A stretch of DNA of 64,000 nucleotides, taken from positions 6,634,001-6,698,000 of the forward strand of contig OZ281497.1 of the NCBI GenBank assembly GCA_965637545.1, read 5' to 3'. Of the stretch, positions 730 to 18,399 are shown piece by piece. Within the stretch, counting starts at the first letter, position 1, and every line of letters starts with the position of its first letter. This DNA is from Phallusia mammillata (Eukaryota). The notes under the pieces are model-generated. The model was not told where the DNA came from. It saw only the letters and a program-made list of their open reading frames with translations, and searched no databases. The position numbers were made by a program, and so were the translations under genes.

Positions 730-3700
730 TTATTTTCCTTTCCGAAAATACATCTCTATCTCTTCCAATGTCTTTCCTTTGGTCTCAGGCATAAGGAAAA
801 TTGTGAAGAGGACTGACAATGCACAGTTTCCCGCAAATATCCAAAAGGTCCCTTGAGGTGTAAAAGCAACCTAAACAAAAATTATTGGGTATACATACAT
901 ATATATATCCAATACAGGTTATATAAGCACACACACATGCTTAAAGCACAGAAATAAGCTATTTTGCAGTAGAAATGTAAACTATATGACGATTTGAGCT
1001 TTGCGCCTGAGATGCAATGAACCAGTTGTGTTATGAGCCAAAAGACGTGTATACCATTCCTTGCTAAGCTTAAGACTTATTTTTAATATTTTTTTGCCTA
1101 GTTAATTAGCACAAAAATTGGGTAGGCTGAATTGTCTAAAAAAATCGCACAACATAGCATTGGCGACTATTTTAATTTCTAGAAAACACTTTCTTACCAG
1201 CATATTGCTGAATTCTAAGGTAAGAATGAATACAAGGAAATAGTTGAATCCAGTGGAAAGACCAGCAGCTCTCTCTTTGGCTCGGGCTGGGATGATTTCA
1301 CCAACAAGTAACCAAGCAATTGGTCCGATCCCAATGGAATATGCAGCAATGAAAACCACCATGCTTACAAGGGCCATCCAAGAAAGACTGGGATCTTTAA
1401 GATGAAATATTTTATTTACACGTGAAAGAGAAGATGACAATCATAGAAATCAGACATTTAAACTTACTTCCACTTGAGGCAGCATGTACCGCGGTCATGT
1501 TACTGTGGGTCACGTGAGCTGCCATGGATTGTTTCAGTTGGAAGTAGATGCCGAAAGTTGTAAGACTGAGTGTCATGATTACAGCTCCCGTTATGAGAAG
1601 AACTTTTCTTCCTGTACAAGCGATTCAGATCAAGGTTAGGACAGCATAAGAGACTACATGTAACTAATTTAAAGATATTTCAGTAATCAAACGGAACGAA
1701 AGGGGACTGATTTTTCTGCTTATCGCAGAAGTATCCACAACAAACCACAAATTGGCAACATGGAATATTTTTCTTTCTGCAACTTTGATACAACTCACGC
1801 GTGTAGTTTTTGAATGTTTTCGAAATAGTTTGTATTTTTTAAAAGTTGACTTAAAAACAGTTTATCTTACCAGTTTTGTCTATGATCAGGCAGGCGACGA
1901 TAGTAAAGAAAACTTGAGCCGAAGCGATTGCCAGCAAAGCGATGGTGATCTGGGTGTGATTGGTAAATCCAGCGCTCTATAAGTATAAAAAACATATTAA
2001 AACTAAACATAAGTGTATTTTTCCAAATAACCTAACAGTAAAAGAGATGGCAAGAAACGGAAAATACATCTGTTCATTAAGAGTTAAGCTCAATTATAAT
2101 TTTCCTATACCAGAACAATCCATAATTGTCAATGTTAAGCAGTCTTTTGAAAAGGGGATTACGTTGCGGAAATTAAAAATAACGATGGAAAACAGAACAA
2201 TGGAAACAAAAAAGTGACAAACGTTTGCAAGGACTTTTAAAATTCACTTTAAAATGGGTCCCACCATGAAGCTAAGTGATGTTACATGTTTGCTATTAAT
2301 AAACTCAGTCGGTCTAGTTTTTTATACTTGCCATGAAAATACTTTTTGCGTAGAACATTACGCAATTGATTCCACTGATTTGCTGGAAATACATTGCTCC
2401 GAGTGAAAGAAGTACAGGAGTCCTCAGTGAACTGTCTTTGACGATTTCCAGCCAGGAAGCTTGGCTCTCCTGCTTTGACAAACTTTCTTCTAGTTGAGTG
2501 AACTCCGCATCGACATCCGACTAAAACAGAAAATCGTGTCGTGAAAAAGAACTTTGCGTTTCTTGCTACTATGATTTCTTACAATATCTTAAGTGGAAAG
2601 TCATCGACTGGAGTCTGTTAAGGTCAGATATTTTAATTGAATCAAATCTAGAAAGACTATTCGAGCAATTATTGGAAAAAAATACTGGAATTAGCTGAGA
2701 ATAAAAACAATAAACTCGACGATGCAGGGAGTAAAACCACAGTTTTAACAGAAACTGGAGGATTTTGGTATTTATTACTATTAATGTCTTGGACTTAACT
2801 CAAGTCTAGTAATAACTGAAAAGTCTTGACTCGTCTATAAGTGCCGTTCACGGTCCTTTGGATTCGGACTTGAACACGTCAATAAACTATTTTACTAAGT
2901 TGTAACCCCGGGTTACTCATTCACAATATTTTTGGTAGTCTACACAAAAAAAGTGCAACTTTGACAAAAAAACTAAAAAATAGTGATCGGTGTTTTGCAA
3001 AGTTTGTCGAAAGGGCGATAACTTACATCGCAACTTCTCAATTTCACCAGGGACTGCTTTGCGGCTTCTGGTCGATTCTTCATCAACAAATAAGTTGGAG
3101 TTTCAGGGATAAAGATTGAAAGCAAACTGAGAAGTCCTGGAGGAGTAATGGCCGCAAAGGCAAGTGCTCTCCAGTTTAAAACTGATCCTGGAAACACAAA
3201 CAAATGAATATTGAACAAGTAATATTATAGACCACGCAAGAAACAACGAAAAAGTCAGTTAAACGTGTGTGCTTTTAGAAAAAGACGTTTTACGCAACGA
3301 AGCGTTGTATCTCGTACAAGAATAAAAACAAACATGTTCGAAAACTGTAAACAACCCATATGAAAATAGCGGCTTTCCAATTTGATTTCTACCAGTTATA
3401 ATGATCGCAATAAAAAGAACAAATCGTTTTTAATGAGTAATTTATTCTTGAGAAATACTACAATGAAATGCCAAAACAATAACTACTTTTTTGTTTATTG
3501 GTGGGTGTTTAACTATGATTGTTGTCGACTTTACAAAGCTTGCTATAAAATCATGAAGATAAAATTACTCTTAGCTAAAAAAGCTTTTAACGCACCCAGT
3601 CCGTAAATCAGCAGAATTCCTGACACAATGCACAACTGATTGGCAGATCCCAGCATGCCTCGAAGTTTTACTGTTGATACTTCACCGATGTATGTCTGAA

Positions 3701-6700
3701 ATAATAATGAATGGTTGTTTTTAAATTCTTTGCCACGGAACAGTGTGTAAAGGTTCTTAACTTGTTGTGACCATTGAGCGTAATGCGTTAAACAATACGT
3801 TGAGCGCAAATAACACAAAGGGGCCTTACTAAAGGTCACATACCACCAACGCAATGTTATGCAGTATTCCTTTTAGGGGGCTGTCCTTCTGTGGTGTTCA
3901 TTTTACTTGACCCGTATCTTTATGCTGAGAATATTTAGAAACGTGAATTGTGTACCTAAATGCGAATTTTACTTAACTGCCACAGAAAGTCAGAACAACG
4001 ATGTGCATAAACTCAAACCAGTGTTTATCAACAAATGAGTTTCGAACCTAAGGAAATCAAATGTTAAACGTTTCTTACAAAGAACGATCAATCAAAAACT
4101 CTTGCAAACACACCCACGGTTGTGAAATATTCAGCACGTTTTCGTGAAGAATGCTCGCAAAAGGAAAATTACTTCATATAATCTTACTCAACTCCCTTGA
4201 CACGTGAACATGTACGTGACACAAGCATTTGCATGTTTTTCTCACACGACAGATAGTTGTCAAATTATTTCCAAGTATTGAGCCATTGGTTAGCATGCAT
4301 ATAAACTGTGTCAATGTTTCGGTATTTATATCAAATTTAAATTTCTGGTTAAAGTCAAAATAAATATAGTGTTGTTGTCAGACAAAAAAATTGTGTTTGT
4401 GTGTTTTTATCCTGTTTAGTGCTGTAATAACGATTGTGTTGGATATTGTACAACTACCCTGATAAAGATGCCCCAAATGAGACGTCGAAAGAGTTACCTC
4501 AATTGCCAATTAAGAAGAGTTGTAAGCAGGCCTGAAATTGGGGACCGAACCCAAAAGTACAAGACCAAAAACTTGTCCGAACCAGTTTTATTTAATTATT
4601 ATGGGCAATGAGTTGAGAATTAAACTTACTGGTACTATAAGAGAAATCATGCCCACTCCAAGACCGGTAACGACCCTGCCCACAAATAACATCCACATCT
4701 GACTTGCGAAACCAATAACCTGCAAAACAAACAATTAAAGTCAAAAACAAATCAACAAAACCAAACCTAAATGCCTCTGTGTCGAATGCAAGAGGGGATG
4801 AAATAAACATGCATACATTCATAACTGGGATCAGCCCTGAAGCTTTCATACAGACCAGCGATCACGGCACACTCAAAAGTAAAGCAATATAGACCAGGCC
4901 TAATGAAGGCGGAATTCCTAACCAGCCCGTCACCAAGCATTCCCAAAGGGCAAGACACAGGCTAAAGAATACAGCCTGTGGGATTCGAACGCACGACAGG
5001 AGCTTTTCCGGGAAGCACCGTTGCCTGCCTCGTACGCTGCACATGTCAGCTTGATACTGGCTGATCGCCAGGTTGACCATCGATCAGTAACAGGAGTTGT
5101 TTGCAATTTAGTTTTGGCTTAACAATGATAGTTTTAAGATACACAGCAAGGGAATTCACCTCACATAGTTCAAATGTCAACTACTACATTTCAAAGTCAT
5201 TAGCTGTATTGGACAACAGAGGGAAGTTACGCAATAAAACCACAACAGAGCGTTTAATGGATGATTACCAATAATCCAACCGCGAAGGGTATCCCGCAAA
5301 TGATCGATGTAAACTTCCTTCCGATAGCTTGCATGATGAACCCGGCAATGTACGCTCCGGCCACAGCTCCCACAGTCACTGACGCCTTAAACAACAAAGC
5401 GTAAAATTAGTAAAAAAGTATTTGCTCTTCCAAATTTTTTTGAAGTTGAACATGAAATTAACACAGCTCAAAATGTTTGCGTTGCTGACATAAAAAGCTT
5501 CGTAAAAATGCCAAACACATTTTTTTACAATCTAATGGCATGCTGGTGATTTTAACAATGCCGTTCCAAGCATAGGGTGCCTAAACCTACTCGTAGTTTA
5601 TTACTTGTTGCGTAATTAGACGTTATAAGTTATCATCAATGAGTACTGCACTGTTTTAAATCCAGCGCGTTATACTATACTAGCTTGACTTGAGTCATCG
5701 TGTATAAATTCTTGTGTAGAGCTCGAATCAAATCCATTTGAGCATAACAAATGTAATTTAACTGTTTGCTTTTTTACAGGTAGGCAACAGTACTATATTT
5801 TCATACTTGTACTCTGCAAACTTTAAAACCAAGAAAAAAGCAACACAAATTTCGATTTTAGGTTTATACGCATACATCGCCGGAAATGACATCACATAGG
5901 TCATTTCAATACCTTCCGTGCCCAGCTATGTCGTGTATTTGTATACAAGGCATAAATTGTAACGACAAATGGTCGTTTGTCATATAGTGTTGTGCAACCT
6001 CTGACAGTTAAGGGCAAGTAGGGTGTAGCTTCTGTATTCGGAGATTTTAACACAACATCGTGCGATACACACGACTCGTATATCACAACATAATTTGCAA
6101 TATACAATTATATGACAAGCTTTTCACATTGACTACAAATATGTAAAGTTATTTTGTGACATGATTTTCAACATGCCTAAATTACGCCAAAACCTACTCA
6201 TATGAGTAATTTAGTGCACACAAATAAAGTAAAATCGAAATGTTTAGCTAACAACGAAAAAGGATTTTCAAAAAATCTTACCTAAAACTGTTGTTTTTTT
6301 ATTGGTTAAATCCACTTATTTTTGTTTAGTTTATAAAGTTTTACAATTTAATTTAAACAGCAATATGGGCCAGATATATAGCTGCCATATTATTTGACAA
6401 ATATACTTCTGTCTTTCCGGTTTGCTTTGTCAGCTTTGTTTACGTCAGTTTCGAATCCGGTCACGCAAGCAGGCGTTCGTATTCAATTTTCGCAAACAAG
6501 TTTGACAAACAATACCCTTTCTACATTATTTTTACGCTAAGTTTTAAATCCAACCACTCAAGCGTACAAAATAGTGTTTCACAGTCTTGAAATAAAGACA
6601 AACTTCAAGTGATATTTATATATCCAGTACTGTATATGTGTGTGTATAAATAAACAATAGCAGTCTCCGTTACAAAACAATAGCTATGACTGAGTTTCTT

Positions 6701-10060: not shown

Positions 10061-13000
10061 ATGGCAACGACACGCTTAAACGCATTGTTACGCTTCGTTG
10101 GGCATTGCATTCTATTGTCAGTACTTGGTTTGCCTTATGCTGTAAAGGCACAATTTCCAAGAGCGTGTACTAGTTTGGAAGTAGTTTTAAGTAAAGAATG
10201 CTGCCCGCCGATAAACGGAACCGGATCCCAATGTGGCGTGACGGAGGGCAGAGGTCAATGTGATGACATCACCATTGATGACGCACCATACGGTGACCAG
10301 TACGTCTTGTTGGGAATCGATGATAGAGAAAGATGGCCTGAACGTTTTTTCAACAGGTAAGGGCTTTTTTTGTTGATTTCTGGATGTAAAACTGAATATT
10401 GAAATATTTTGGAGTTGCCAGCACGTTTTTCAGGCCATTTTCTGTGTACAAATACACACAGGTTAAAAAAGTAAAATATCCTTTATTTTTAGGTCCTGTG
10501 TCTGCAACGGCAATTTTGCTGGCTTTGACTGCTCAAGATGTCGACCTGGGTGGCAAGGCGATGATTGTCAGGAAAGACGACCTGCAAATGTTAGACAAAA
10601 TATCATGGAAATGACCGAGGAGCAAAGAACCAACTTTCTTGATGTGCTTGATCGTTCCAAAACAACACCTCATCCCGATTATGTGGTTGCCAGCGAGCAT
10701 TACAGGTGTTTTACGGCCTCAAGTATAAAATACAGCTTTATAATTTTAAACAGCGTTGTTGGGCCGGGCATTTTATGTGGTGTTCGGGCGCTAGTTTTAG
10801 GCCCGCTTACAATATTTGGTTACAAATACTCATAGAAACTGCGATGCTGCCACTATTGTGGGCACAGTCAATGGTTTTCCTAATAGGCTATGCATTTTTA
10901 ACTGGTCAAGCTTTACAACATTTACAAGTTTGGGAGGTATCACAGGTTTTTGGCAATATTAGGCAAGTGTTTACGTTTGAAAACAGCTTTTATCTCATGT
11001 TTGACTTATGTACTGTATTAAAAATCCAACAATTTTAATTTTAAAATAAAGATGTCACTTACCTATAAAATCAGTTGTTTTGTATTAATACAAAAGTTTT
11101 GCTACGCAGAAATCTACTAGGAGCCAACGGCACTGATCCTCAGTTTGTAAACATCACAATTTACGATCTGTTTACGTGGAACCACTACTATTCGGTACGA
11201 GACACTCTCCTTGGACCAGGACAAACTTACACAGCTATTGACTTCTCCCACGAAGGACCGGCTTTTCTTACCTGGCACCGAATGCATCTTCTGGCTTTGG
11301 AAGATGACCTCCAGCGCTTGTCTGGTGACCCCACCTTCGCTCTTCCTTACTGGAACTTTGCTATTGGAGGTAACTTGAGGTCAAAAGGGTACTTAAAGAG
11401 GTCAAAAATTCTTTGGGGCCGTCTTAATTGGCATTGAGTTACGTTTGGTCAATTTATCTGACTCAATTGCTTTTTAATAGTCTAAAAAAAAATTTAACGT
11501 ACAATTTGACCTCGAAAAGGTAAAAGATTTTCTACTGTTTATGATTTCTTAATTAATTCTTTTGAACTCTGTCATAGGCTCAGAGTGCGACATTTGTACG
11601 GATGAGTTACTCGGCAGTCAGGACCCGGCTGACCCGACTTTACTCGGTAACAACTCTCGTTTTGCCGACTGGGAAGTCGTATGCCTCAGCATGGATTGGT
11701 ACAATGACAATGTAAAGCTTTGTAATGGAACATTTGAAGGTAAAAGAAAACAAATTGCAATAGTGATTTGTTCAAATTCCGCAATAAGTGTTTGCCAAAA
11801 TAGCTCGTTTCGACTCGCTAGTTCAAAGATCTCGAGGAAGGCAAAATTTGTGGCAACTTAATTCAAAGCTCTCTCGTATGCAGTACAGTTTCCTATAGCT
11901 TTAGAAGATTGCGTTTATCTTTTAAAATTAAAAACGCAAATTTCATTAGTCCTATTTCAATTCTGTCTCGGTCACTTGTGTCCTGAGCAAGAACTTGAGC
12001 GACAATGCTCCAACCTAGAGTAAGTTGGAATCTGATAGGTTGAACTAAATTAAAGTCACCAACTCCCCAAGTCGAAAAAAACCAAGTAAACTTGCAGCTC
12101 GAAAGCAGACTCATTGTGAGCATAAGGCCTTTGGACATTGCCTGCCCATTGACGATAAAAATAAAGTATTTTAATTTTCCAGGACCAGTCCGTCGCAATC
12201 CCGGTGGCAATGTAGAACGTCCGGAAGTTCAAGTCCTCCCTCAGCCTGATGATGTAGAAAGTTGTGTACGTGTAGAAACATACGACAATTTTCCATTCTA
12301 TTCGGACTCCAATAGCAGCTTCAGAAATGCTCTAGAAGGTAAGCTGTTGTCTCCAACCCAGTCTTACTTGCAAATTTTCTTCGCTGGTTTTATAAAGTAA
12401 AATGAATCTTCGCTAAACTTAAAGTTACCTAGCACGGATGTCAAACCGCCAACCCTACGATTGCATCATACACTCATCCTTTTTGTCATAGTTCGCCAGG
12501 CCTATATTGAAGGCATAATACCGAATCATCCGGTCACCAAGCATTCCCAATATCGCAAGGCTTAGGCTAGAAAATTCATGAACATAAATTACTGGGATCA
12601 GCTCTAAAGCGTTCGTGCAGACCAGCGATCAAAGCACTTTTTGACTACAAATTTATTTTTAGGCTACTCGAAGGTTGATGGAGAATTCGAGGTCGGGGTT
12701 CGAACCCTGCATAACCTTGCTCATTTATTTCTCAATGGAACCGGGGGAATCACCCACGCGTCAGCTAATGACCCCATTTTTGTTCTGTTGCATTCGTTTA
12801 CCGACGCTATTTTCGAGGAATGGTTAATAAGGTAAAATTGCACCAAAGTTGCAAAGTTCTTGTTGCATTATTTTGCAAACGGATTTAAATCCCGTTTTCA
12901 TTTGCAATGGTAACTTTAATTTGATGTTTATGTGCGAAATAACAATAGTTTAAACCGATTGCTATGAAACATGGCACTTTAGAAGCGTTTTTTCCATTTA

Positions 13001-14149
13001 CCCCCGTCTCTTTGCTTTCATGCAACTACTAAAAAGGGCAGTGGGCTTTCTTTCACTGTTAATCTCAGGCTTAGCATTGAATGTCTTTGGTGTGGGAGTA
13101 GAAAGTTTCTACTAGAAACACCATATGTGTCAAGTTAATGCGTTTTTTGGCAATATCCATCCTGTGCCGTCTTCACGATAAGGACTTTGTTATTTACCCA
13201 ATTTACCAGAAGTGTCCATTTATCCCTTTTTAAAACCATGTTGTTATATAACCGATGTTTCATTTTTTGCTACAGAAACAACGCAACAGAGGGAGACTAC
13301 CCAGTTGAAGATGCACCAATTGGACACAACCTTAACTTCAACATGGTTCCATTTTTTCCACCAGTGAAGAACCGTGGCATGTTTGTGTCCAGCGAACAAT
13401 TGGGATACAGTTATTCAGTGCAGTTTGCAGGTAACTTAATGACACATTTGGGTCGTTACCTTATCGCTGCGTTTAAACATTGCCAATTGCGGCATAAAGC
13501 AAACTTGCATCGTACCTGAGTGCTTAGGGTAATTCCTAAATGCTTCCAGACTTAAACCTAATAATCTTCGTTTTTAAACGAGCGGCGTAGGTAACAAGCT
13601 CGCTTCCTGATCTGAGACCATTTTGACCCACTTGCGCTATCTAACGGAAGATAATTTTTCGGCATAAACAGGACACACTCTTTCCGACTTGTATAAAGTA
13701 AAAGCCTTATTATATCTCACATTTTAAATGGTGTCAAAAACAATTACCTTCGTTTTGACTAATTGTTCTATTACAGTTAATTTACAATTACAAAGCTCCA
13801 CGCTTATTACCACATTCAAAATGCGCCATAGAACCGATAGATAGAGCAGTTTTTCTGGCCATGATTACTTATTCTTGACGTACTTCATTTTAAAATGATC
13901 AAATTTAAGAGCAACATTTTAACAGTTTCTGTATTTGTTTTTTTAGCAGCGGAGCCCTCTGAGACATTGGCAACAACCGAATCATTCATTTGGGCATCTG
14001 TCGGAGTTCTGGCTTTCATTGTGCTGAATGTGTTAGTTGCTTTGTCTGTCGCTGCAGCTCGGAGATACAAAAGACGGCAAAAAGAAGAAGACCTTTACCA
14101 GAGTTTGATCTCAGACGACAACAACCCTGGAATTATGTACACTTCCTAA
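10061..14149 (+). CDS. TYRP1/2: Tyrosinase-related protein (Tyrp1/Dct pro-orthologue), about 537 aa, 8 exons, type I membrane protein
   Basis: Exons: 10061-10356, 10493-10705, 11110-11369, 11578-11739, 12183-12338, 12663-12831, 13276-13430, 13947(or 13950)-14149; phases compatible. Signal peptide then QFPRAC; Cys-rich EGF-like region; MeA site [20 protein letters not shown]; MeB site [22 protein letters not shown] (L-H, not the H-H of tyrosinase); TM helix and short cytosolic tail. Confidence 0.96.
11955..12165 (+). mobile_element. Decayed CORE-type SINE (5'-truncated) in Tyrp intron 4
   Basis: B-box remnant ttcaattc, CORE-like block tgtgtcctgagcaagaacttgagcgacaatgctcc (11977-12011), 3' end ataaaaataaa; homologous to 14281-14398. 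Confidence 0.55.
12485..12635 (-). mobile_element. tRNA-containing repeat family, copy B (tail blocks only, permuted order)
   Basis: Contains ccggtcaccaagcattccc and actgggatcagc...cagaccagcgatc blocks, in the opposite order to copy A. Confidence 0.7.
13005..13100 (-). pseudogene. 96-bp duplicated fragment of the BRCA2-like exon 3 lying in Tyrp intron 6
   Basis: 88/96 identical, ungapped, same orientation as 15587-15682; reads [33 protein letters not shown] versus [33 protein letters not shown]. Confidence 0.92.
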
Positions 14150-14280
14150 ATCATTTGTGTTTTTTGATCTTGTGCTTTGTGATATGTAATACAATATTTA
14201 TGTCTGAATATTATCGTTTCTAAGAGCAAACCAGAGACCTTGGGTGGTATAATTAATACAATTTGGTTTAACACTTTAGA

Positions 14281-14398
14281 GTCCACTAGGCGGGAGCAAT
14301 GCCACTCGAGTTCCTTGCTTAGGAAACATAAATGGTCGAGATAGGATTAGAACTCAAAAACATTGCGAACACAAGGCGGTTGCGCTAATCACTTGGCA
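14281..14398 (-). mobile_element. Decayed tRNA-headed CORE-type SINE
   Basis: Minus strand: A-box-like gccaagtgattagcgc, B-box-like gagttctaatcc, then gtttcctaagcaaggaactcgagtggcattgctcc (CORE-like); matches 11955-12020. Confidence 0.55.
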
Positions 14399-14724
14399 AA
14401 TTATAGCTTTTACCCATAATGCTAGTGTGGATCTTAATCGTTTCATAACTAGGCCTAAGTGAATAGTAGATTGATGGTTTTAATCATGCGTTACACCTAA
14501 AGAGCAATATCAACTGTGCTCGCAAATTTACGGGTAATCATATCTGGAGATCTCCTGTAGGGATGACTATAGGATCATGGGCATTGGGTTGTTTGTCCCA
14601 CCGAGGATAATGATTTTCAAAAAAATTACCCGCATCAATTTACGCAAAAACGCTCAAATGGTTGCTAAAATTGACGCGAAAGGTTGGAGGGCCCAATCAT
14701 GTCTCGGTCGTGGGTGTTTCGCCC

Positions 14725-15000
14725 CCTATGCTGCACATGTCAGCTTCGTAGTAGGGGATCGCCAAATTGACAAGTATCGGGCAGCATACGAGGCAGGCAA
14801 CGGTATTGTGATTCAACTTTCGACGGGTTTACCACTGAGCCTGTGTAGCTCAGTTGGTCGAGCGCGAGTCCCGGGAAGACTCCTGTCGTGGTTCCAAATC
14901 CCATCGCAGGCTAGATTTTTCAAGTCTACGCCTTGCCATATGGGCATGCTTGGTGACCGGCCGAATCGGTATTAGCATTCAATGGGCCTGGCGTATTGTG
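14725..15000 (+). mobile_element. tRNA-containing repeat family, copy C (head inverted; intact cloverleaf at 14839-14911)
   Basis: GCCTGTG/CGCAGGC acceptor stem, GCTC/GAGC D-arm, GAGTC/GACTC arm with loop CCGGGAA, T-arm, then TTTTT; the upstream head block is the reverse complement of the head in copies A and D. Confidence 0.8.
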
Positions 15001-15351
15001 ATTCTTTCATTCCCAATTTTAATTTATGCAACGCAGCATCTCATTCTCGGTGATTCCGACTTCACAAACCTGCATTCTTTAGAGTTAGTGTGTAATGACT
15101 AACAACAATATCCCCAAAATAACTTTAACTTTGTATAGAATTGAAGAATTCTTAAAATGTGAAAAAACACACAAGACCAATAACATTGTAAATCGTTAAA
15201 AATAGAAAAGCAGTGAGCATGCACAAAGTGTTGAAATGCTTGTGAAATGGAAAAGGCAAAGGGAAGGTGAAACAAGGTGCTCATCAAAAAGCAACTTAGA
15301 CACAAATAAATTTCAGTTGTCTGTGACCAACTGAAGCACAGGATACAAGAT

Positions 15352-17900
15352 TTAAACATTTTCAAATAGTTCCATCGCCATTAGTAAGCTTTCGTCAGAA
15401 ACATTAATTTGGTCTTCATAAGTTGGTTTCATTCCTAGTTTTCTTTTTGCAGAATGTGTGTTACTTTCAACATTTTGTTGCATATTTTCTTTATTATTTG
15501 CTCCACCATCTGCAAGAGAGTGTGGTTTTAAAGTGCTACTTTCAGTGGGACAAATCTTTCTCCGTGGTGGCTTGTAAGAGCTATTTCGTCTCTTTGCTTT
15601 TATGCAACTACTAAAGAGGGCAGTGGGCTTTCTTTCACTGCTAATCTCAGGCTTTGCATTCAATATCTTTGCTGTTGGAGTAAGAACAGCACATGTAGTA
15701 ATTTTATCTGCAACAGTCTTACTTCCAGCATTACCACTTTTGAAGTGGTTTAAATTGTTCTGGTTTTGTGCCTTGGCGGATGCACTACTGACCATTGCTG
15801 GTTTTGGTGTATCCGTTTGCAGTTTTGGTTCATCATGGAAAAGATGCTGTATTTTAGCCCATGATTGTTTCGATATAGACAGTGGCTTATTACCAGCTGT
15901 GCTGAACCCAGTAGAGTTTGTAAATCCAAATTTATCAGCATCATTAATGATACTTTGTGCTTTGGCCAATGCTTTAGATGAAACTGTCAAAGGCTTTTTG
16001 CTGGCAGAAATAAATCTTGTTGTTTGTGGACACTCAGAGTTTGGAACTCCAAAATTTCCCATGGATGTAGTATTAACCTCTTTCCTGGTTGAGTTATTTA
16101 ACTCAGAACTGGTTGCTGAAACAATACAAGATTTACTTGTGACTTCTAAACTTGTGTTTTCAACATTAGGTTTCTGACAATTAAAAGCAGTTTGGTCCGC
16201 TTTGCTACAATCCAAGCTTGGTTGCTTCTTTATAACTTTGCAAGCTCTATTCCATGCGTCTTTTGGTACAGTAACACCTTTCAGTGCAGTAGTAGGCTTG
16301 TGTGATTTACCAATATCAGATGAATCAACACTAGCAATGAAATTTGCTGCCTTCTCCCAAGATGTAGCTGAAACTTTTAAAGGCTTCATACTGGCTGTTT
16401 GAAAACCAACGCAAGGTAAGTTGTTGACAGCTCCTTGTTCAACATTTGGATCATTGGTGCGATATGTCTTACTTTCCAACACTTTTGGTAAAGTAGAACC
16501 TGATTTTGCTAAGTTCATACATGGAAAGGAAGTTGTGTCTTTAAGGTTACTGTTACTTTGACATATTTTATTACAACTGCTGTTACCAATTCCAGGGGCA
16601 TCGTATTGGGATTCATTTTTGTTTCCACTGGTATCCACTTTTGTAATGTCATCTTTGTTCAGTGCAAGACTACTGCTGTCAGTAATTTTTGACACACAAT
16701 TAGATTCAACATTACCATTGTTACCGTCGTATACGACAGTTGATTTTACAGAACAAGATTGTCTTTGTTTATCACAGGAAATAGCAACTATTTCAACAGG
16801 TTTTACAGTAGAAATAACAGGTGAGCTTTTGGTGACATTTCTGACAGAACAGCCTTTTTGCTTAACACTGTTTGGAGTTACAGAACTGGCACCAGAAACC
16901 TTGTTAAAAGATCCACTTAAAGTTCTTGCAACCGGTTTGAGATTGGGTTTCTTTTTCCAGGGGTTGAATTCATCTGCTTGTGGTGTAAATGGCCTTTTCT
17001 GTGCTGTACTTTTATCATGAATGACACTTTTTGGTGTTACCTGGTTCCCTGTGCATGGTGCAGTACTTTTTACATCACACTTTGGTGTTGATTGGGATGA
17101 TTCACTGGTTAAAAGGCACTTTGCTCTTTTTCGTTTGGATTTTCGTGACTTTCTAAGAACTGGAGATGTACTCCCATCTACCAACATTGCTCCACAGCTT
17201 GAAGTAGGTTCAGATACTGCAAAGCTTGTAGTATATTTTGTTTGTTTTGCACTCTTTGGAGTATTTAAAAGTTTTGAAATGTCTTTTTGCATACTTTCTT
17301 CAGATCCATTGATACATGTTCTGGAAGAATCCTTCACTTCATTAGATTTTTCCAGCAAATTGGTTTGGTTTTTTGAAATATGGGAACGTGTTTTCAAAAG
17401 CGTTTTTGAAGGACATGAAACATCAGTAGCTTCAGGTTTTATTTGACATGGATAAAGAAACTTTGGTTTTGTTTCCTCTTCATTTTTCAAAGCTTGTGTA
17501 ATTGAAAAACTTGATGGACTTTCACCAGCATCTTTTGTTGTACTTGTGACACTAAATTTGAAAAAAAAGGTTATGTTGAAGAATAAAATACTGCATATTT
17601 AAAAGACAAATACCTTGTTGTAGCAGAAAGTGATTGTGGTACTGCAGGTGTCGCTTTGGTAGATTCATCCTCCACCAAGTCCTGTTTAACTTGTTCATTC
17701 AAATCATCAAACCAATTTGGATTTAAAGGCCCCAAAGCTTAAATTACAAAGTTTGTGTGACAATGACTAAAAGATTTAATGCAATTTAACCAAATTAATG
17801 ACAAACCACACAGCATACCTTTCATAAGTTCTTCATTTTTGGAAATTTCATTGAACAGTTTTTCGTCAATGTCATCAAAAAAGTCGTCACCACAAGCCAT
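15352..17900 (-). CDS. BRCA2: Short BRCA2-like protein (about 801 aa): PALB2-binding motif plus 3 clear and 1 degenerate BRC repeats, no helical/OB/tower DNA-binding domain
   Basis: Exons 17819-17900, 17614-17737, 15352-17551 (2406 nt, phases 1 and 2 compatible). LGPLNPNWFDDL (17700-17735) matches human LGPISLNWFEEL, with a phase-1 intron just before LGP as in human exon 2/3. BRC repeats: GFQTASMKPLKVSATSWEKAANFI (about 16336-16407), RFISASKKPLTVSSKALAKAQSII (about 15946-16017), GFSTAGNKPLSISKQSWAKIQHLFHDE (about 15829-15909); degenerate LKGVTVPKDAWNRACKVI (about 16233-16286). Confidence 0.85.
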
Positions 17901-18399
17901 TGGAAATCAATTGACATTGGCACTAACTAAACTAATGTAATGCAGATTTTCATAACTGTTGGTGTTTCCACGCAGTAAACATACCAATTTGCCCGAATTC
18001 CAAGTTTCCAACCACAGCAAGCATGTAAAATTGTAACAAATAATTAAATCCTGCAAAAAAGTTGTATTTGCCGCCAGACAATCGTCGTATATATAAGCAA
18101 TGTTTTTTTTTCCATTTTAAATGTACGGACAAACACAACTCAAATTAAGAGTGTGGATAATTGGGGCTGCAAATTAATAGTTTTCACTGCTGAACAAAGA
18201 CAATAATTATTAAAGTTATATCAGTTGGAAACACGTTTAATTTCAAACATTGAACTTGCAGTTTTATCAAAAGTTTGTACATGTGAAGTGTAACCTGGTT
18301 GTTGGAAAGGGATATTGGTGAAAATTTTGATCTTAAATACTGAGTTTAGCTTACAATTTCGTTGTAGTTGTTAAACAACGATGTCAGTAAAACTTGAAA

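What the first reader, a model, noticed from the sequence alone, without database searches (positions are those of the whole stretch)
15352..17900. A BRCA2 stripped of its DNA-binding domain in a chordate
Seen: a 3-exon, about 801-aa ORF with LGPLNPNWFDDL directly after a phase-1 intron, three FxxA-type BRC repeats plus one degenerate one, then a TAA. Only about 1.2 kb of repeat-filled DNA separates this stop from the convergent Tyrp stop, and no OB-fold-like exons appear there or in the short Tyrp introns. Known: the human PALB2-binding motif is LGPISLNWFEEL with the exon 2/3 intron at the same place and phase; vertebrate BRCA2 has 8 BRC repeats plus a helical/OB1-3/tower DBD that binds DSS1; DBD-less BRCA2 is familiar from Drosophila. 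Inference: either this lineage independently evolved a minimal PALB2-tethered RAD51 loader, or BRCA2 is split or duplicated with the DBD encoded elsewhere.
Basis: partly seen in the sequence, partly recalled or inferred. Interest (0 to 1): 0.85.

Follow-up and report, generated by a model that had tools for sequence, protein, structure and literature searches.

The report
Sea-squirt BRCA2 without DNA-binding domain
Sea squirts, the closest invertebrate relatives of vertebrates, make a short BRCA2 repair protein that keeps the parts that hold RAD51 and (probably) PALB2 but ends just where the DNA-binding domain should begin, so they offer a natural test of whether that domain is needed.

Summary
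On the minus strand lies a 3-exon, 801-aa gene (17900-15352). Spliced RNA contigs from four studies confirm both introns, carry the ascidian spliced leader at the 5' end, and run 104-177 nt past the TAA with no further splice.

Pfam finds BRCA2 repeats: three FxxA repeats plus a C-terminal half-repeat. The N-terminal LGPLNPNWFDDL matches the vertebrate BRCA2 PALB2-binding segment (hhalign 94%, E 1e-7).

No helical, OB or tower sequence is found in the protein, the 64-kb window, or five related loci. The same queries hit canonical BRCA2 loci at 1e-91.

The closest public protein is Phallusia mammillata 'uncharacterized protein LOC100185089' (801 aa, 97%). The Ciona orthologue is also unnamed. 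Ten lineages less than 50% identical to each other all stop at the same residue, after a conserved RRNSxYKPPR motif and the half-repeat. The truncation is therefore old and under selection.

Not settled: whether a DNA-binding domain is encoded elsewhere in these genomes. Profile searches of public proteins gave no tunicate-named hit, but the assembly itself could not be searched. PALB2 presence was also not tested.

The best reading is a third, chordate lineage of noncanonical BRCA2. No paper describing it turned up. The scan noted only this stretch and a 96-bp copy nearby.

The parts
18050..18052 (-). Spliced-leader trans-splice acceptor (AG at 18052-18051; mRNA body starts at 18050)
   Evidence: The X3 contig carries 21 non-genomic letters at its 5' end. 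They read GTACGGG+ATTCTATTTGAATA and are followed by genomic AG. ATTCTATTTGAATAAG is the Ciona spliced leader (PMC1488885).
17901..18050 (-). 5' UTR, 150 nt, with an in-frame TGA 9 nt before the ATG and no upstream in-frame ATG
   Evidence: covered by RNA contigs
17819..17900 (-). Exon 1 coding part (aa 1-27 plus the first base of codon 28)
   Evidence: joint 17737/17819 seen in four runs
17738..17818 (-). Intron 1, 81 nt, phase 1, GT..AG. It sits directly before (L/I)GP, at the same place in L001, L002 and L087.
17614..17737 (-). Exon 2 (aa 28-69)
17700..17735 (-). LGPLNPNWFDDL, the counterpart of the vertebrate BRCA2 N-terminal PALB2-binding motif (LGP[IL]..[NH]WFEEL)
   Evidence: Vertebrate BRCA2 N-termini fetched here carry the motif at aa 14-40. 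hhalign of the tunicate profile against the vertebrate profile gives probability 94.2%, E 1.2e-7. AlphaFold predicts a helix over aa 36-49.
17552..17613 (-). Intron 2, 62 nt, GT..AG
15352..17551 (-). Exon 3 (aa 70-801 plus TAA), the equivalent of the large BRC-repeat exon
16768..17157 (-). Strongly basic, low-complexity stretch (aa 201-330; pI 10.4; 27 K/R against 7 D/E). It holds RKSRKSKRKRAK and the conserved EFNPW motif. It is a candidate nuclear-localisation or DNA-contact region; that role is inferred.
16327..16410 (-). BRC repeat 1 (FQTA)
   Evidence: Pfam PF00634 E 6.4e-4 on this piece; hairpin plus helix in the model, pLDDT 66-70
15937..16020 (-). BRC repeat 2 (FISA)
   Evidence: Pfam E 6.3e-3 on this piece; hairpin plus helix
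15829..15912 (-). BRC repeat 3 (FSTA ... HLFHDE), the best-scoring repeat
   Evidence: Pfam E 3.1e-5, 23.7 bits, above the 20.3-bit cut-off
15556..15600 (-). KAKRRNSSYKPPRRK, an invariant N-S-x-Y-x-P-P-R motif of the family; FxPP ('PhePP')-like
   Evidence: Invariant columns in ten lineages. The FxPP motif is defined in PMC11436757. Canonical BRCA2s carry FxPP between the repeats and the DBD. A profile comparison gave no support.
15355..15441 (-). Terminal module KLGMKPTYEDQINVSDESLLMAMELFENV, a half BRC repeat. It lacks FxxA but keeps the helix and an LFxE-type end, and it is the protein's conserved C-terminus.
   Evidence: It matches Pfam BRC profile positions 12-29 in 7 of 10 family members (E 1.2e-5 to 0.04) and in the window (E 0.022). 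Helix 788-800 has pLDDT about 70-78. All ten lineages end here.
15352..15354 (-). TAA stop. Other species have TAG after GTA, ATG or GTG, so there is no shared splice donor.
15175..15351 (-). 3' UTR as far as the contigs reach (ends at 15248, 15248, 15212 and 15175). The true poly(A) site was not determined, and there is no AATAAA within 320 nt.

Best explanation
This is the tunicate orthologue of BRCA2, and its product is a naturally DBD-less ('noncanonical') BRCA2.

Shown:
- The gene makes a spliced-leader-capped mRNA of about 2.7 kb encoding 801 residues.
- The protein is almost entirely disordered.
- Its conserved islands are an N-terminal helix with the BRCA2-type LGPxxxNWF(D/E)(D/E)L motif, three BRC repeats, an invariant NSxYxPPR motif, and a terminal half BRC repeat followed by a stop kept at the same residue in at least ten divergent lineages.

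Inferred mechanism:
- The N-terminal motif docks the protein on PALB2 (or whatever occupies that role in tunicates), which brings it to damaged chromatin.
- The FxxA repeats capture RAD51 monomers by mimicking the RAD51 oligomerisation interface.
- The C-terminal YxPP motif plus the FxxA-less half-repeat bind RAD51 without blocking polymerisation, and so stabilise the filament, as the exon-14 and exon-27 PhePP sites do in human BRCA2.
- Contact with ssDNA, normally made by the helical/OB/tower domain with DSS1, is supplied by the partner or by the basic disordered stretch (aa 201-330), as reported for moss BRCA2.
For: Gene and transcript:
- Model.
- Both introns and the transcript extent seen in four runs of four studies, with no joint beyond exon 3.
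- Spliced leader at the 5' end.

BRCA2 identity:
- Pfam BRC repeats, E 1.1e-13: and piece by piece.
- The N-terminal motif aligned to vertebrate BRCA2 N-termini with hhalign probability 94.2%, E 1.2e-7.
- A phase-1 intron directly before (L/I)GP in four tunicate loci.

No DBD:
- Pfam finds none.
- A DBD HMM gives negative scores on all family members.
- tblastn with DBDs gives E 0.66 or worse on the window and on five related loci (about 3 to 10 kb downstream of the gene), against 1e-91 and 7e-89 on the canonical loci L003 and L004.
- AlphaFold finds no globular domain (mean pLDDT 43.7).

Age and selection:
- Ten clusters less than 50% identical to each other end at the same residue behind a conserved module.
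- The flanking genes of these loci are not shared.
- The stop contexts differ, so no hidden donor is shared.

Elsewhere in tunicates:
- No tunicate-named protein in three DBD profile searches, although Ciona and Phallusia proteins are in that database.

Plausibility:
- DBD-less BRCA2 works in Drosophila and moss, and moss BRCA2 binds ssDNA through a disordered region (PMC12412785).
Against: - The genome outside this 64-kb window could not be searched, so a separate DBD gene is not excluded.
- The search of longer proteins (915-2912 aa) showed only the best 120 of 489 hits.
- Word-seeded searches can miss fast-evolving tunicate sequences.
- PALB2 was not looked for. As I recall, a published survey of Ciona Fanconi genes (Stanley et al. 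2016) found no convincing PALB2 or BRCA2; that paper is not held here.
- The Ciona N-terminal motif is much weaker (LGSTSADWLNIL).
- The YxPP resemblance is a four-residue motif with Tyr in place of Phe, and it has no profile support.
- Contigs drop rare isoforms and do not define the poly(A) site.
- No binding or function was tested.
Confidence: 0.65

Rival explanations
1. BRCA2 is split. This gene encodes the PALB2/RAD51-binding half, and a separate gene elsewhere in the genome encodes the helical/OB/tower domain. The two products act together or apart.
For: The protein ends about 70 residues after an FxPP-type motif. In canonical BRCA2 that motif lies shortly before the DBD, so the break falls at a natural domain boundary. 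The assembly outside the window was not searched. One search showed only 120 of 489 hits.
Against: No tunicate-named DBD protein appeared in the 420-1380 aa range, which was listed in full or nearly so (all 51 hits, 120 of 122). That search reached plants, oomycetes and chytrids. Nothing turned up in the window or next to the gene in five other loci. The first-stage notes of this genome mention no OB, tower or BRCA2 gene elsewhere, which is a weak test. No split BRCA2 is known to me in any organism.
Confidence: 0.2
2. This is a side copy or an unrelated BRC-repeat protein, and a canonical full-length BRCA2 exists elsewhere in tunicate genomes.
For: BRC repeats alone do not prove orthology. The best non-family hits by repeat similarity are insects and protists, not deuterostomes.
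Against: The BRCA2-specific N-terminal motif and its phase-1 intron are kept. An exhaustive HMMER pass over 1.84 billion representatives with the repeat exon found no second tunicate-like BRCA2. The gene is expressed, trans-spliced and conserved.
Confidence: 0.1
3. Artefact or decaying gene: the open reading frame is cut short by a misassembly, a nonsense mutation or a missed splice site.
For: A 96-bp copy of part of exon 3 lies 2.5 kb away in a Tyrp intron, which shows some local rearrangement. No AATAAA follows the stop.
Against: RNA contigs of four studies read through the stop unchanged. A public 801-aa protein has the same end. Ten lineages share the end and a conserved terminal module. 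The 96-bp copy has zero RNA depth.
Confidence: 0.03

Closest known systems
Vertebrate BRCA2 (human: 3418 aa, 8 BRC repeats, helical/OB1-3/tower DBD bound by DSS1, exon-14 and exon-27 PhePP sites)
   Same: An N-terminal LGPxxxNWF(E/D)(E/D)L motif at about residue 30, behind a phase-1 intron. BRC repeats in one large exon. An aromatic-x-P-P motif after the repeats.
   Different: Only three full repeats. Everything from the helical domain onward is missing: no OB folds, no tower, hence no DSS1 site and no exon-27 region. The protein ends in a half BRC repeat that vertebrate BRCA2, as far as compared here, does not have at that place.
Drosophila melanogaster Brca2 (noncanonical, DBD-less; described as such in PMC12412785)
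   Same: A short protein with BRC repeats and no canonical DBD. It shows that such a protein can support mitotic and meiotic recombination.
   Different: The tunicate protein keeps the vertebrate-type PALB2-binding motif, whereas flies, to my knowledge, have neither PALB2 nor that motif. The tunicate C-terminal YxPP plus half-repeat module was not compared with the fly protein here.
Physcomitrium patens BRCA2 (PMC12412785)
   Same: BRC repeats without a DBD, a largely disordered protein, and DNA binding proposed or shown to reside in a disordered region.
   Different: A plant lineage and an independent loss. In moss the ssDNA binding was measured. Here the basic stretch is only a candidate.
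Engineered BRCA2 lacking the DBD (PMC3240595, title and abstract only)
   Same: The same logic of a PALB2-binding end plus RAD51-binding repeats working without the DBD.
   Different: Those are laboratory constructs in mammalian cells. This is a natural gene kept across a subphylum-level clade.

Membership tests
BRCA2 (orthologue group) | BRC repeats (Pfam PF00634) with the FxxA RAD51-mimic motif | tested here: met
   E 1.1e-13 with 4 stretches. Three FxxA repeats score individually. Hairpin plus helix predicted for each.
BRCA2 (orthologue group) | N-terminal PALB2-binding segment (human residues about 21-39, W31/F32/L35) | tested here: met
   At sequence level only. The motif is shared with lizard, bird, frog and fish BRCA2; hhalign gives 94.2%, E 1.2e-7. 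Binding itself was not tested.
BRCA2 (orthologue group) | Helical domain, OB1, OB2, OB3 and tower (PF09169, PF09103, PF21318, PF09104, PF09121) | tested here: not met
   Absent from the protein, from the window and from five related loci. The positive controls L003 and L004 hit at 1e-91 and 7e-89.
BRCA2 (orthologue group) | Conserved gene structure: a phase-1 intron directly before the LGP motif | tested here: met
   Seen in the window, L001, L002 and L087. The human phase (exon 3 starts at c.68) comes from my own knowledge and was not checked with a tool.
BRCA2 (orthologue group) | PhePP (FxPP) recombinase-filament binding site | tested here: inconclusive
   An invariant Y-x-P-P-R in ten lineages and FxPP at a comparable place in canonical proteins. 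However, the residue is Tyr not Phe, and the profile comparison gave probability 0.7%.
Noncanonical (DBD-less) BRCA2 class, as in Drosophila and mosses | BRC repeats present and canonical DBD absent from the gene product | tested here: met
Noncanonical (DBD-less) BRCA2 class, as in Drosophila and mosses | No other DBD-bearing BRCA2 in the same genome | tested here: inconclusive
   No tunicate-named hit. The assembly itself could not be searched, and one search listed only 120 of 489 hits.
Noncanonical (DBD-less) BRCA2 class, as in Drosophila and mosses | Required for RAD51 loading and homologous recombination | not testable with these tools
   Needs genetics or biochemistry.

The most novel reading that the evidence does not exclude
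The BRCA2 DNA-binding domain, and with it the DSS1-dependent mode of ssDNA engagement, was lost outright in the ancestor of a large tunicate clade (at least Phallusia and Ciona). It was replaced by a new C-terminal RAD51 module: an NSxYxPPR motif plus an FxxA-less half BRC repeat. Recombination in the sister group of vertebrates would then run on a PALB2-tethered, DBD-free BRCA2.
Probability: 0.5. Interest if true: 0.75.

Novelty: new member of a known kind. Interest (0 to 1): 0.62.

Why it matters
The DBD carries most of the pathogenic missense variants of human BRCA2, and how far it is needed is still argued. Only flies and mosses are cited as natural DBD-less cases (PMC12412785).

A DBD-less BRCA2 in tunicates would put such a case inside the chordates. 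These are laboratory animals (Ciona, Phallusia) with transgenesis and CRISPR, and their protein still has the vertebrate-type PALB2 motif. That makes three questions directly testable:
- whether PALB2 tethering compensates for the DBD;
- what the terminal YxPP and half-repeat module does to RAD51 filaments;
- whether DSS1 still matters.

It would also give a name to 'uncharacterized protein LOC100185089'. As I recall, the published Ciona Fanconi-gene survey (Stanley et al. 2016, not held here) reported no convincing BRCA2, so it may fill that gap as well.

Tried and rejected
- **Continuation past the stop.** I tested whether exon 3 splices on beyond the stop, for instance with Tyrp nested in an intron. 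It does not: four RNA contigs show no joint, the 96-bp exon-3 copy at 13004-13099 has zero depth, and the stop contexts of four species share no donor or phase.
- **PDB sequence search.** A search with the N-terminal 40 residues gave no hit, probably because the PALB2-bound peptide chain is under 20 residues.
- **Exon-14 comparison.** hhalign of the C-terminal module against the vertebrate exon-14 region showed no similarity.
- **The internal 'degenerate repeat'.** aa 491-511 gets no Pfam hit and is predicted disordered.
- **Metagenome scan with a DBD profile.** Of 128 loci, the 80 kept and listed include none from the JGI sample that holds a family member. The scan rests on two peptide patterns, so this is a weak test.
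- **Unnamed DBD hits.** Two unnamed ENA DBD hits (P0312, P0315) were checked in case they were tunicate. They are canonical BRCA2 genes of other samples, with the BRC exon directly upstream, and I used them as positive controls.
- **Ciona genomic context.** Not on record.
- **Synteny around the gene in other loci.** None found.
- **Literature.** Six searches found no description of tunicate BRCA2. Stanley et al. 2016 is not held.
- **Earlier notes of the scan.** Nothing on PALB2, OB folds or a second BRCA2.
- **tRNA origin of the repeat at 14580-15000.** ARAGORN found nothing.
Full report
**What is there**

The minus strand between 18050 and about 15175 carries one gene. From the sequence I rebuilt three coding exons (17900-17819, 17737-17614, 17551-15352). 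They join in frame to 2406 nt and 801 codons and end in TAA at 15354-15352. The ATG at 17900 is preceded by an in-frame TGA 9 nt upstream, with no other in-frame ATG in the leader. The window contains no N.

**Transcript evidence**

One search for public runs returned 20 holders. Most hold 0.92 of the sampled words, about what is expected if the two small introns are missing. I laid four runs from four different studies on 12200-18150.
- All four give a contig that skips exactly 17552-17613 and 17738-17818, with GT..AG on the minus strand. These contigs therefore come from spliced RNA, although the runs' type is only 'guessed'.
- The contigs start at 18014-18052 and stop at 15175, 15212, 15248 and 15248. 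That is 104-177 nt past the stop codon.
- No joint leaves exon 3 in any run.
- One contig (X3) has 21 extra letters at its 5' end. Reverse-complemented they read GTACGGG-ATTCTATTTGAATA and are followed by the genomic AG at 18052-18051, behind a TTTTTTGCAG acceptor.
- ATTCTATTTGAATAAG is the spliced leader of Ciona mRNAs (PMC1488885, found).

The mRNA is therefore trans-spliced at 18051/18050 and its 5' end is complete, so no coding exon lies upstream.

The 3' end is less well defined. There is no AATAAA within 320 nt of the stop. A repeat at about 14580-15000 attracts many 90-95% contigs from elsewhere, and contigs cannot show a poly(A) site.

**Is it BRCA2?**

Pfam finds only PF00634 (BRCA2 repeat) in exon 3, at E 1.1e-13 with four stretches. 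Scanned piece by piece, the stretches are:
- the FQTA repeat (aa 450-477, E 6e-4);
- the FISA repeat (aa 580-607, E 6e-3);
- the FSTA repeat (aa 616-643, E 3e-5, above Pfam's cut-off on its own);
- the last 16 residues, which match profile positions 12-27 (E 0.022).

The internal candidate at aa 491-511 has no hit.

Lizard, tinamou, frog and four fish sequences carry LGP[IL]..[NH]WFEEL or close variants at residues 14-40. The window has ALGPLNPNWFDDL at 28-40. Three other loci of the family have LGPLNENWFDDL, IGPLNTNWFEDL and LGPLNKNWFNEL. Ciona has a weaker LGSTSADWLNIL.

A profile-profile comparison of the tunicate and vertebrate N-termini gives probability 94.2%, E 1.2e-7 over 21 columns.

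In all four tunicate loci where I could read the DNA, the exon starts with two bases that complete a codon, directly before (L/I)GP. That is a phase-1 intron at one fixed place. Human exon 3 starts at c.68, which puts a phase-1 intron directly before L24-G25-P26. This last point is my own knowledge of the gene and was not checked with a tool.

Together, the repeats, the N-terminal motif and the intron make orthology with BRCA2 the best reading.

**No DNA-binding domain in the product or nearby**

- Pfam reports no helical, OB or tower family.
- An HMM built from twelve DBDs gives negative bit scores on every family member.
- AlphaFold2 on a ten-sequence family alignment gives mean pLDDT 43.7, with 634 of 801 residues under 50. 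The only confident elements are N-terminal helices (7-49), three hairpin-plus-helix units at the three BRC repeats, and a C-terminal helix (788-800). No globular domain appears. The alignment is shallow, so this is supporting evidence only.
- tblastn of all BRCA2 proteins collected (about 70, then about 260) against the window finds nothing outside the gene except the 96-bp copy described below.
- As a control I ran twelve DBDs from sea cucumber, lamprey, mammal, fish, shark, oyster, coral, snail, priapulid, hydroid, horseshoe crab and moth against several loci.

| Target | Best E-value |
|---|---|
| Canonical loci L003 and L004 | 1e-91 and 7e-89 |
| The window | 0.66 |
| Family loci L001, L002, L005, L006, L087 (about 3 to 10 kb downstream of the gene) | no better than 0.82 |

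**The truncated form is old and conserved**

An exhaustive HMMER pass over 1.84 billion representatives with exon 3 found 62 proteins.
- The top hit (97%, 801 aa, no indels, 22 substitutions) is Phallusia mammillata CAB3262912.1, 'uncharacterized protein LOC100185089'.
- The Ciona intestinalis counterparts XP_002129592.1 and XP_018668532.1 carry the same non-name. Public annotation does not recognise either as BRCA2.
- The window is therefore from P. mammillata or a very close relative.

Ten representatives, each less than 50% identical to the others, align to the C-terminus of the query and all end at the same residue. The last 100 residues hold a module with 16 invariant columns: KAKRRNSxY(K/R)PPR(K/R)(K/R), a variable linker, then K(K/R)xLGxKxxQExQIxVSDESLLxAxxLFExV followed by the stop.

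The eight unnamed members come from large ENA, Logan and JGI contigs with ORF-style gene calls, so their lengths are exon lengths, but their stops are real. The stop contexts are GTT TAA, GTA TAG, ATG TAG and GTG TAG, which share no donor and no phase.

Outside the gene these loci share nothing with the window. The common end is therefore not a by-product of one local rearrangement.

I take the family to be tunicate because its two named members are. The taxa of the other eight are not known.

**What the conserved C-terminus looks like**

- The last 17 residues match the second half of the Pfam BRC profile (positions 12/13-27/29) in 7 of 10 members. E-values range from 1.2e-5 to 0.04, and two members exceed the curated cut-off. 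The FxxA half is replaced by LGxKxDQ. It is thus a half BRC repeat that keeps the helix and an LFxE-type end.
- The invariant Y-x-P-P-R resembles the FxPP ('PhePP') motifs of human exons 14 and 27. These bind DMC1 and RAD51 and protect filaments from BRC-mediated disruption (PMC11436757).
- In canonical BRCA2s collected here, an FxPP motif lies after the repeats, 21 to about 200 residues before the DBD. The tunicate protein therefore ends roughly where the linker to the DBD would run.
- This remains a motif-level resemblance. Profile comparison with the vertebrate exon-14 region gave probability 0.7%, and the aromatic residue is Tyr.

**Is a DBD encoded elsewhere?**

I could not settle this point. 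Three profile or region searches of 5.8 billion proteins were run with DBDs.

| Search | Length range | Hits | Tunicate-named hits |
|---|---|---|---|
| Insect/protist alignment | about 430-1380 aa | 51, all listed | none |
| Deuterostome-rich alignment | about 420-1330 aa | 122, of which 120 listed | none |
| Sponge BRCA2 DBD region | 915-2912 aa | 489, of which only 120 listed | none among those listed |

The second search reached plants, oomycetes, a chytrid and Bigelowiella. No hit in any search is named as Ciona, Phallusia or any other tunicate, although those proteomes are in the database.

Two unnamed ENA hits that might have been tunicate turned out to be canonical BRCA2 genes from other samples. 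A metagenome scan gave nothing from the JGI sample that holds a family member, but it rests on two peptide patterns. The scan's earlier notes on this genome mention no second BRCA2, PALB2 or OB-fold gene. Such notes record oddities only, so this is weak.

I put the chance of a separate DBD gene at about 0.2 and of a canonical paralogue at about 0.1.

**Mechanism**

Shown: the anatomy, the expression and the conservation described above.

Inferred:
- The N-terminal helix binds the PALB2 WD40 pocket, as in human BRCA2, and so localises the protein.
- The three FxxA repeats hold RAD51 monomers.
- The YxPP motif and the FxxA-less half-repeat contact RAD51 in a way compatible with the filament.
- DNA contact comes from PALB2 or from the basic stretch aa 201-330 (pI 10.4). 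The parallel is moss BRCA2, which binds ssDNA through a disordered region (PMC12412785).

PALB2 itself was not sought. One comparative study places its origin shortly before vertebrates (PMC3969565). My recollection of the Ciona Fanconi survey is that neither PALB2 nor BRCA2 was convincingly found. The strong conservation of the motif in Phallusia-like species argues that some partner exists.

**Comparison with what is known**

The 2025 moss paper states that Drosophila was the only known exception to the canonical DBD, and it adds mosses. Six literature searches found no description of tunicate BRCA2.

I therefore file this as a new member of the known noncanonical class. It has two features of its own: it retains the vertebrate-type PALB2 motif, and it has the terminal YxPP plus half-repeat module.

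The scan has not reported this finding on other DNA.

**Limits**

- Nothing in this work touched toxins or viruses.

Noticed in passing
window 13004-13099 (minus-strand sense), inside a Tyrp intron: A 96-bp copy, 92% identical, of exon-3 bases 15587-15682 (aa 693-724, just before the YKPPR motif). It ends in ...KAKRRG followed by a stop. It has zero RNA depth in all four runs, so it is a silent fragment and not an exon.
   Followed up: yes
window 18050-18052: The BRCA2-like mRNA is spliced-leader trans-spliced. One contig carries ATTCTATTTGAATA before the genomic AG. Whether the gene is the downstream member of an operon was not examined.
   Followed up: partly
window about 14580-15000: A G+C-richer repeat (0.49 against 0.38) between the two convergent genes. 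It attracts many RNA contigs at 90-95% identity, with rearranged joints and loose ends, so it is a dispersed and expressed element. ARAGORN finds no tRNA in it.
   Followed up: partly
window 16948-16971 (aa 263-270); also Ciona P0073 and P0027/L005/L006: A short motif EFNPW(K/V)K is shared by Phallusia, Ciona and the most divergent family member. It lies in otherwise unalignable disordered sequence. Its function is unknown.
   Followed up: no
window 1100-3850, minus strand: ORFs with Pfam Sugar_tr (MFS transporter) matches. This is the next minus-strand gene beyond Tyrp, and it is unrelated to BRCA2.
   Followed up: no
L003 6331-13046 and L004 4059-12550: Two intron-poor canonical BRCA2 genes from unnamed ENA assemblies. 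A long BRC-repeat ORF is followed directly by the helical/OB1 ORF (plus tower and a separate OB3 ORF in L003). They were useful as positive controls. The organisms are unknown.
   Followed up: partly
P0050/P0134 (Daphnia BRCA2): In Daphnia an SSFKAPRR motif is followed by one more full BRC repeat before the DBD. This is the same order (basic stretch, aromatic-x-x-P-R-R, then a BRC unit) as the tunicate C-terminal module. It may hint that the module is ancestral rather than new.
   Followed up: no
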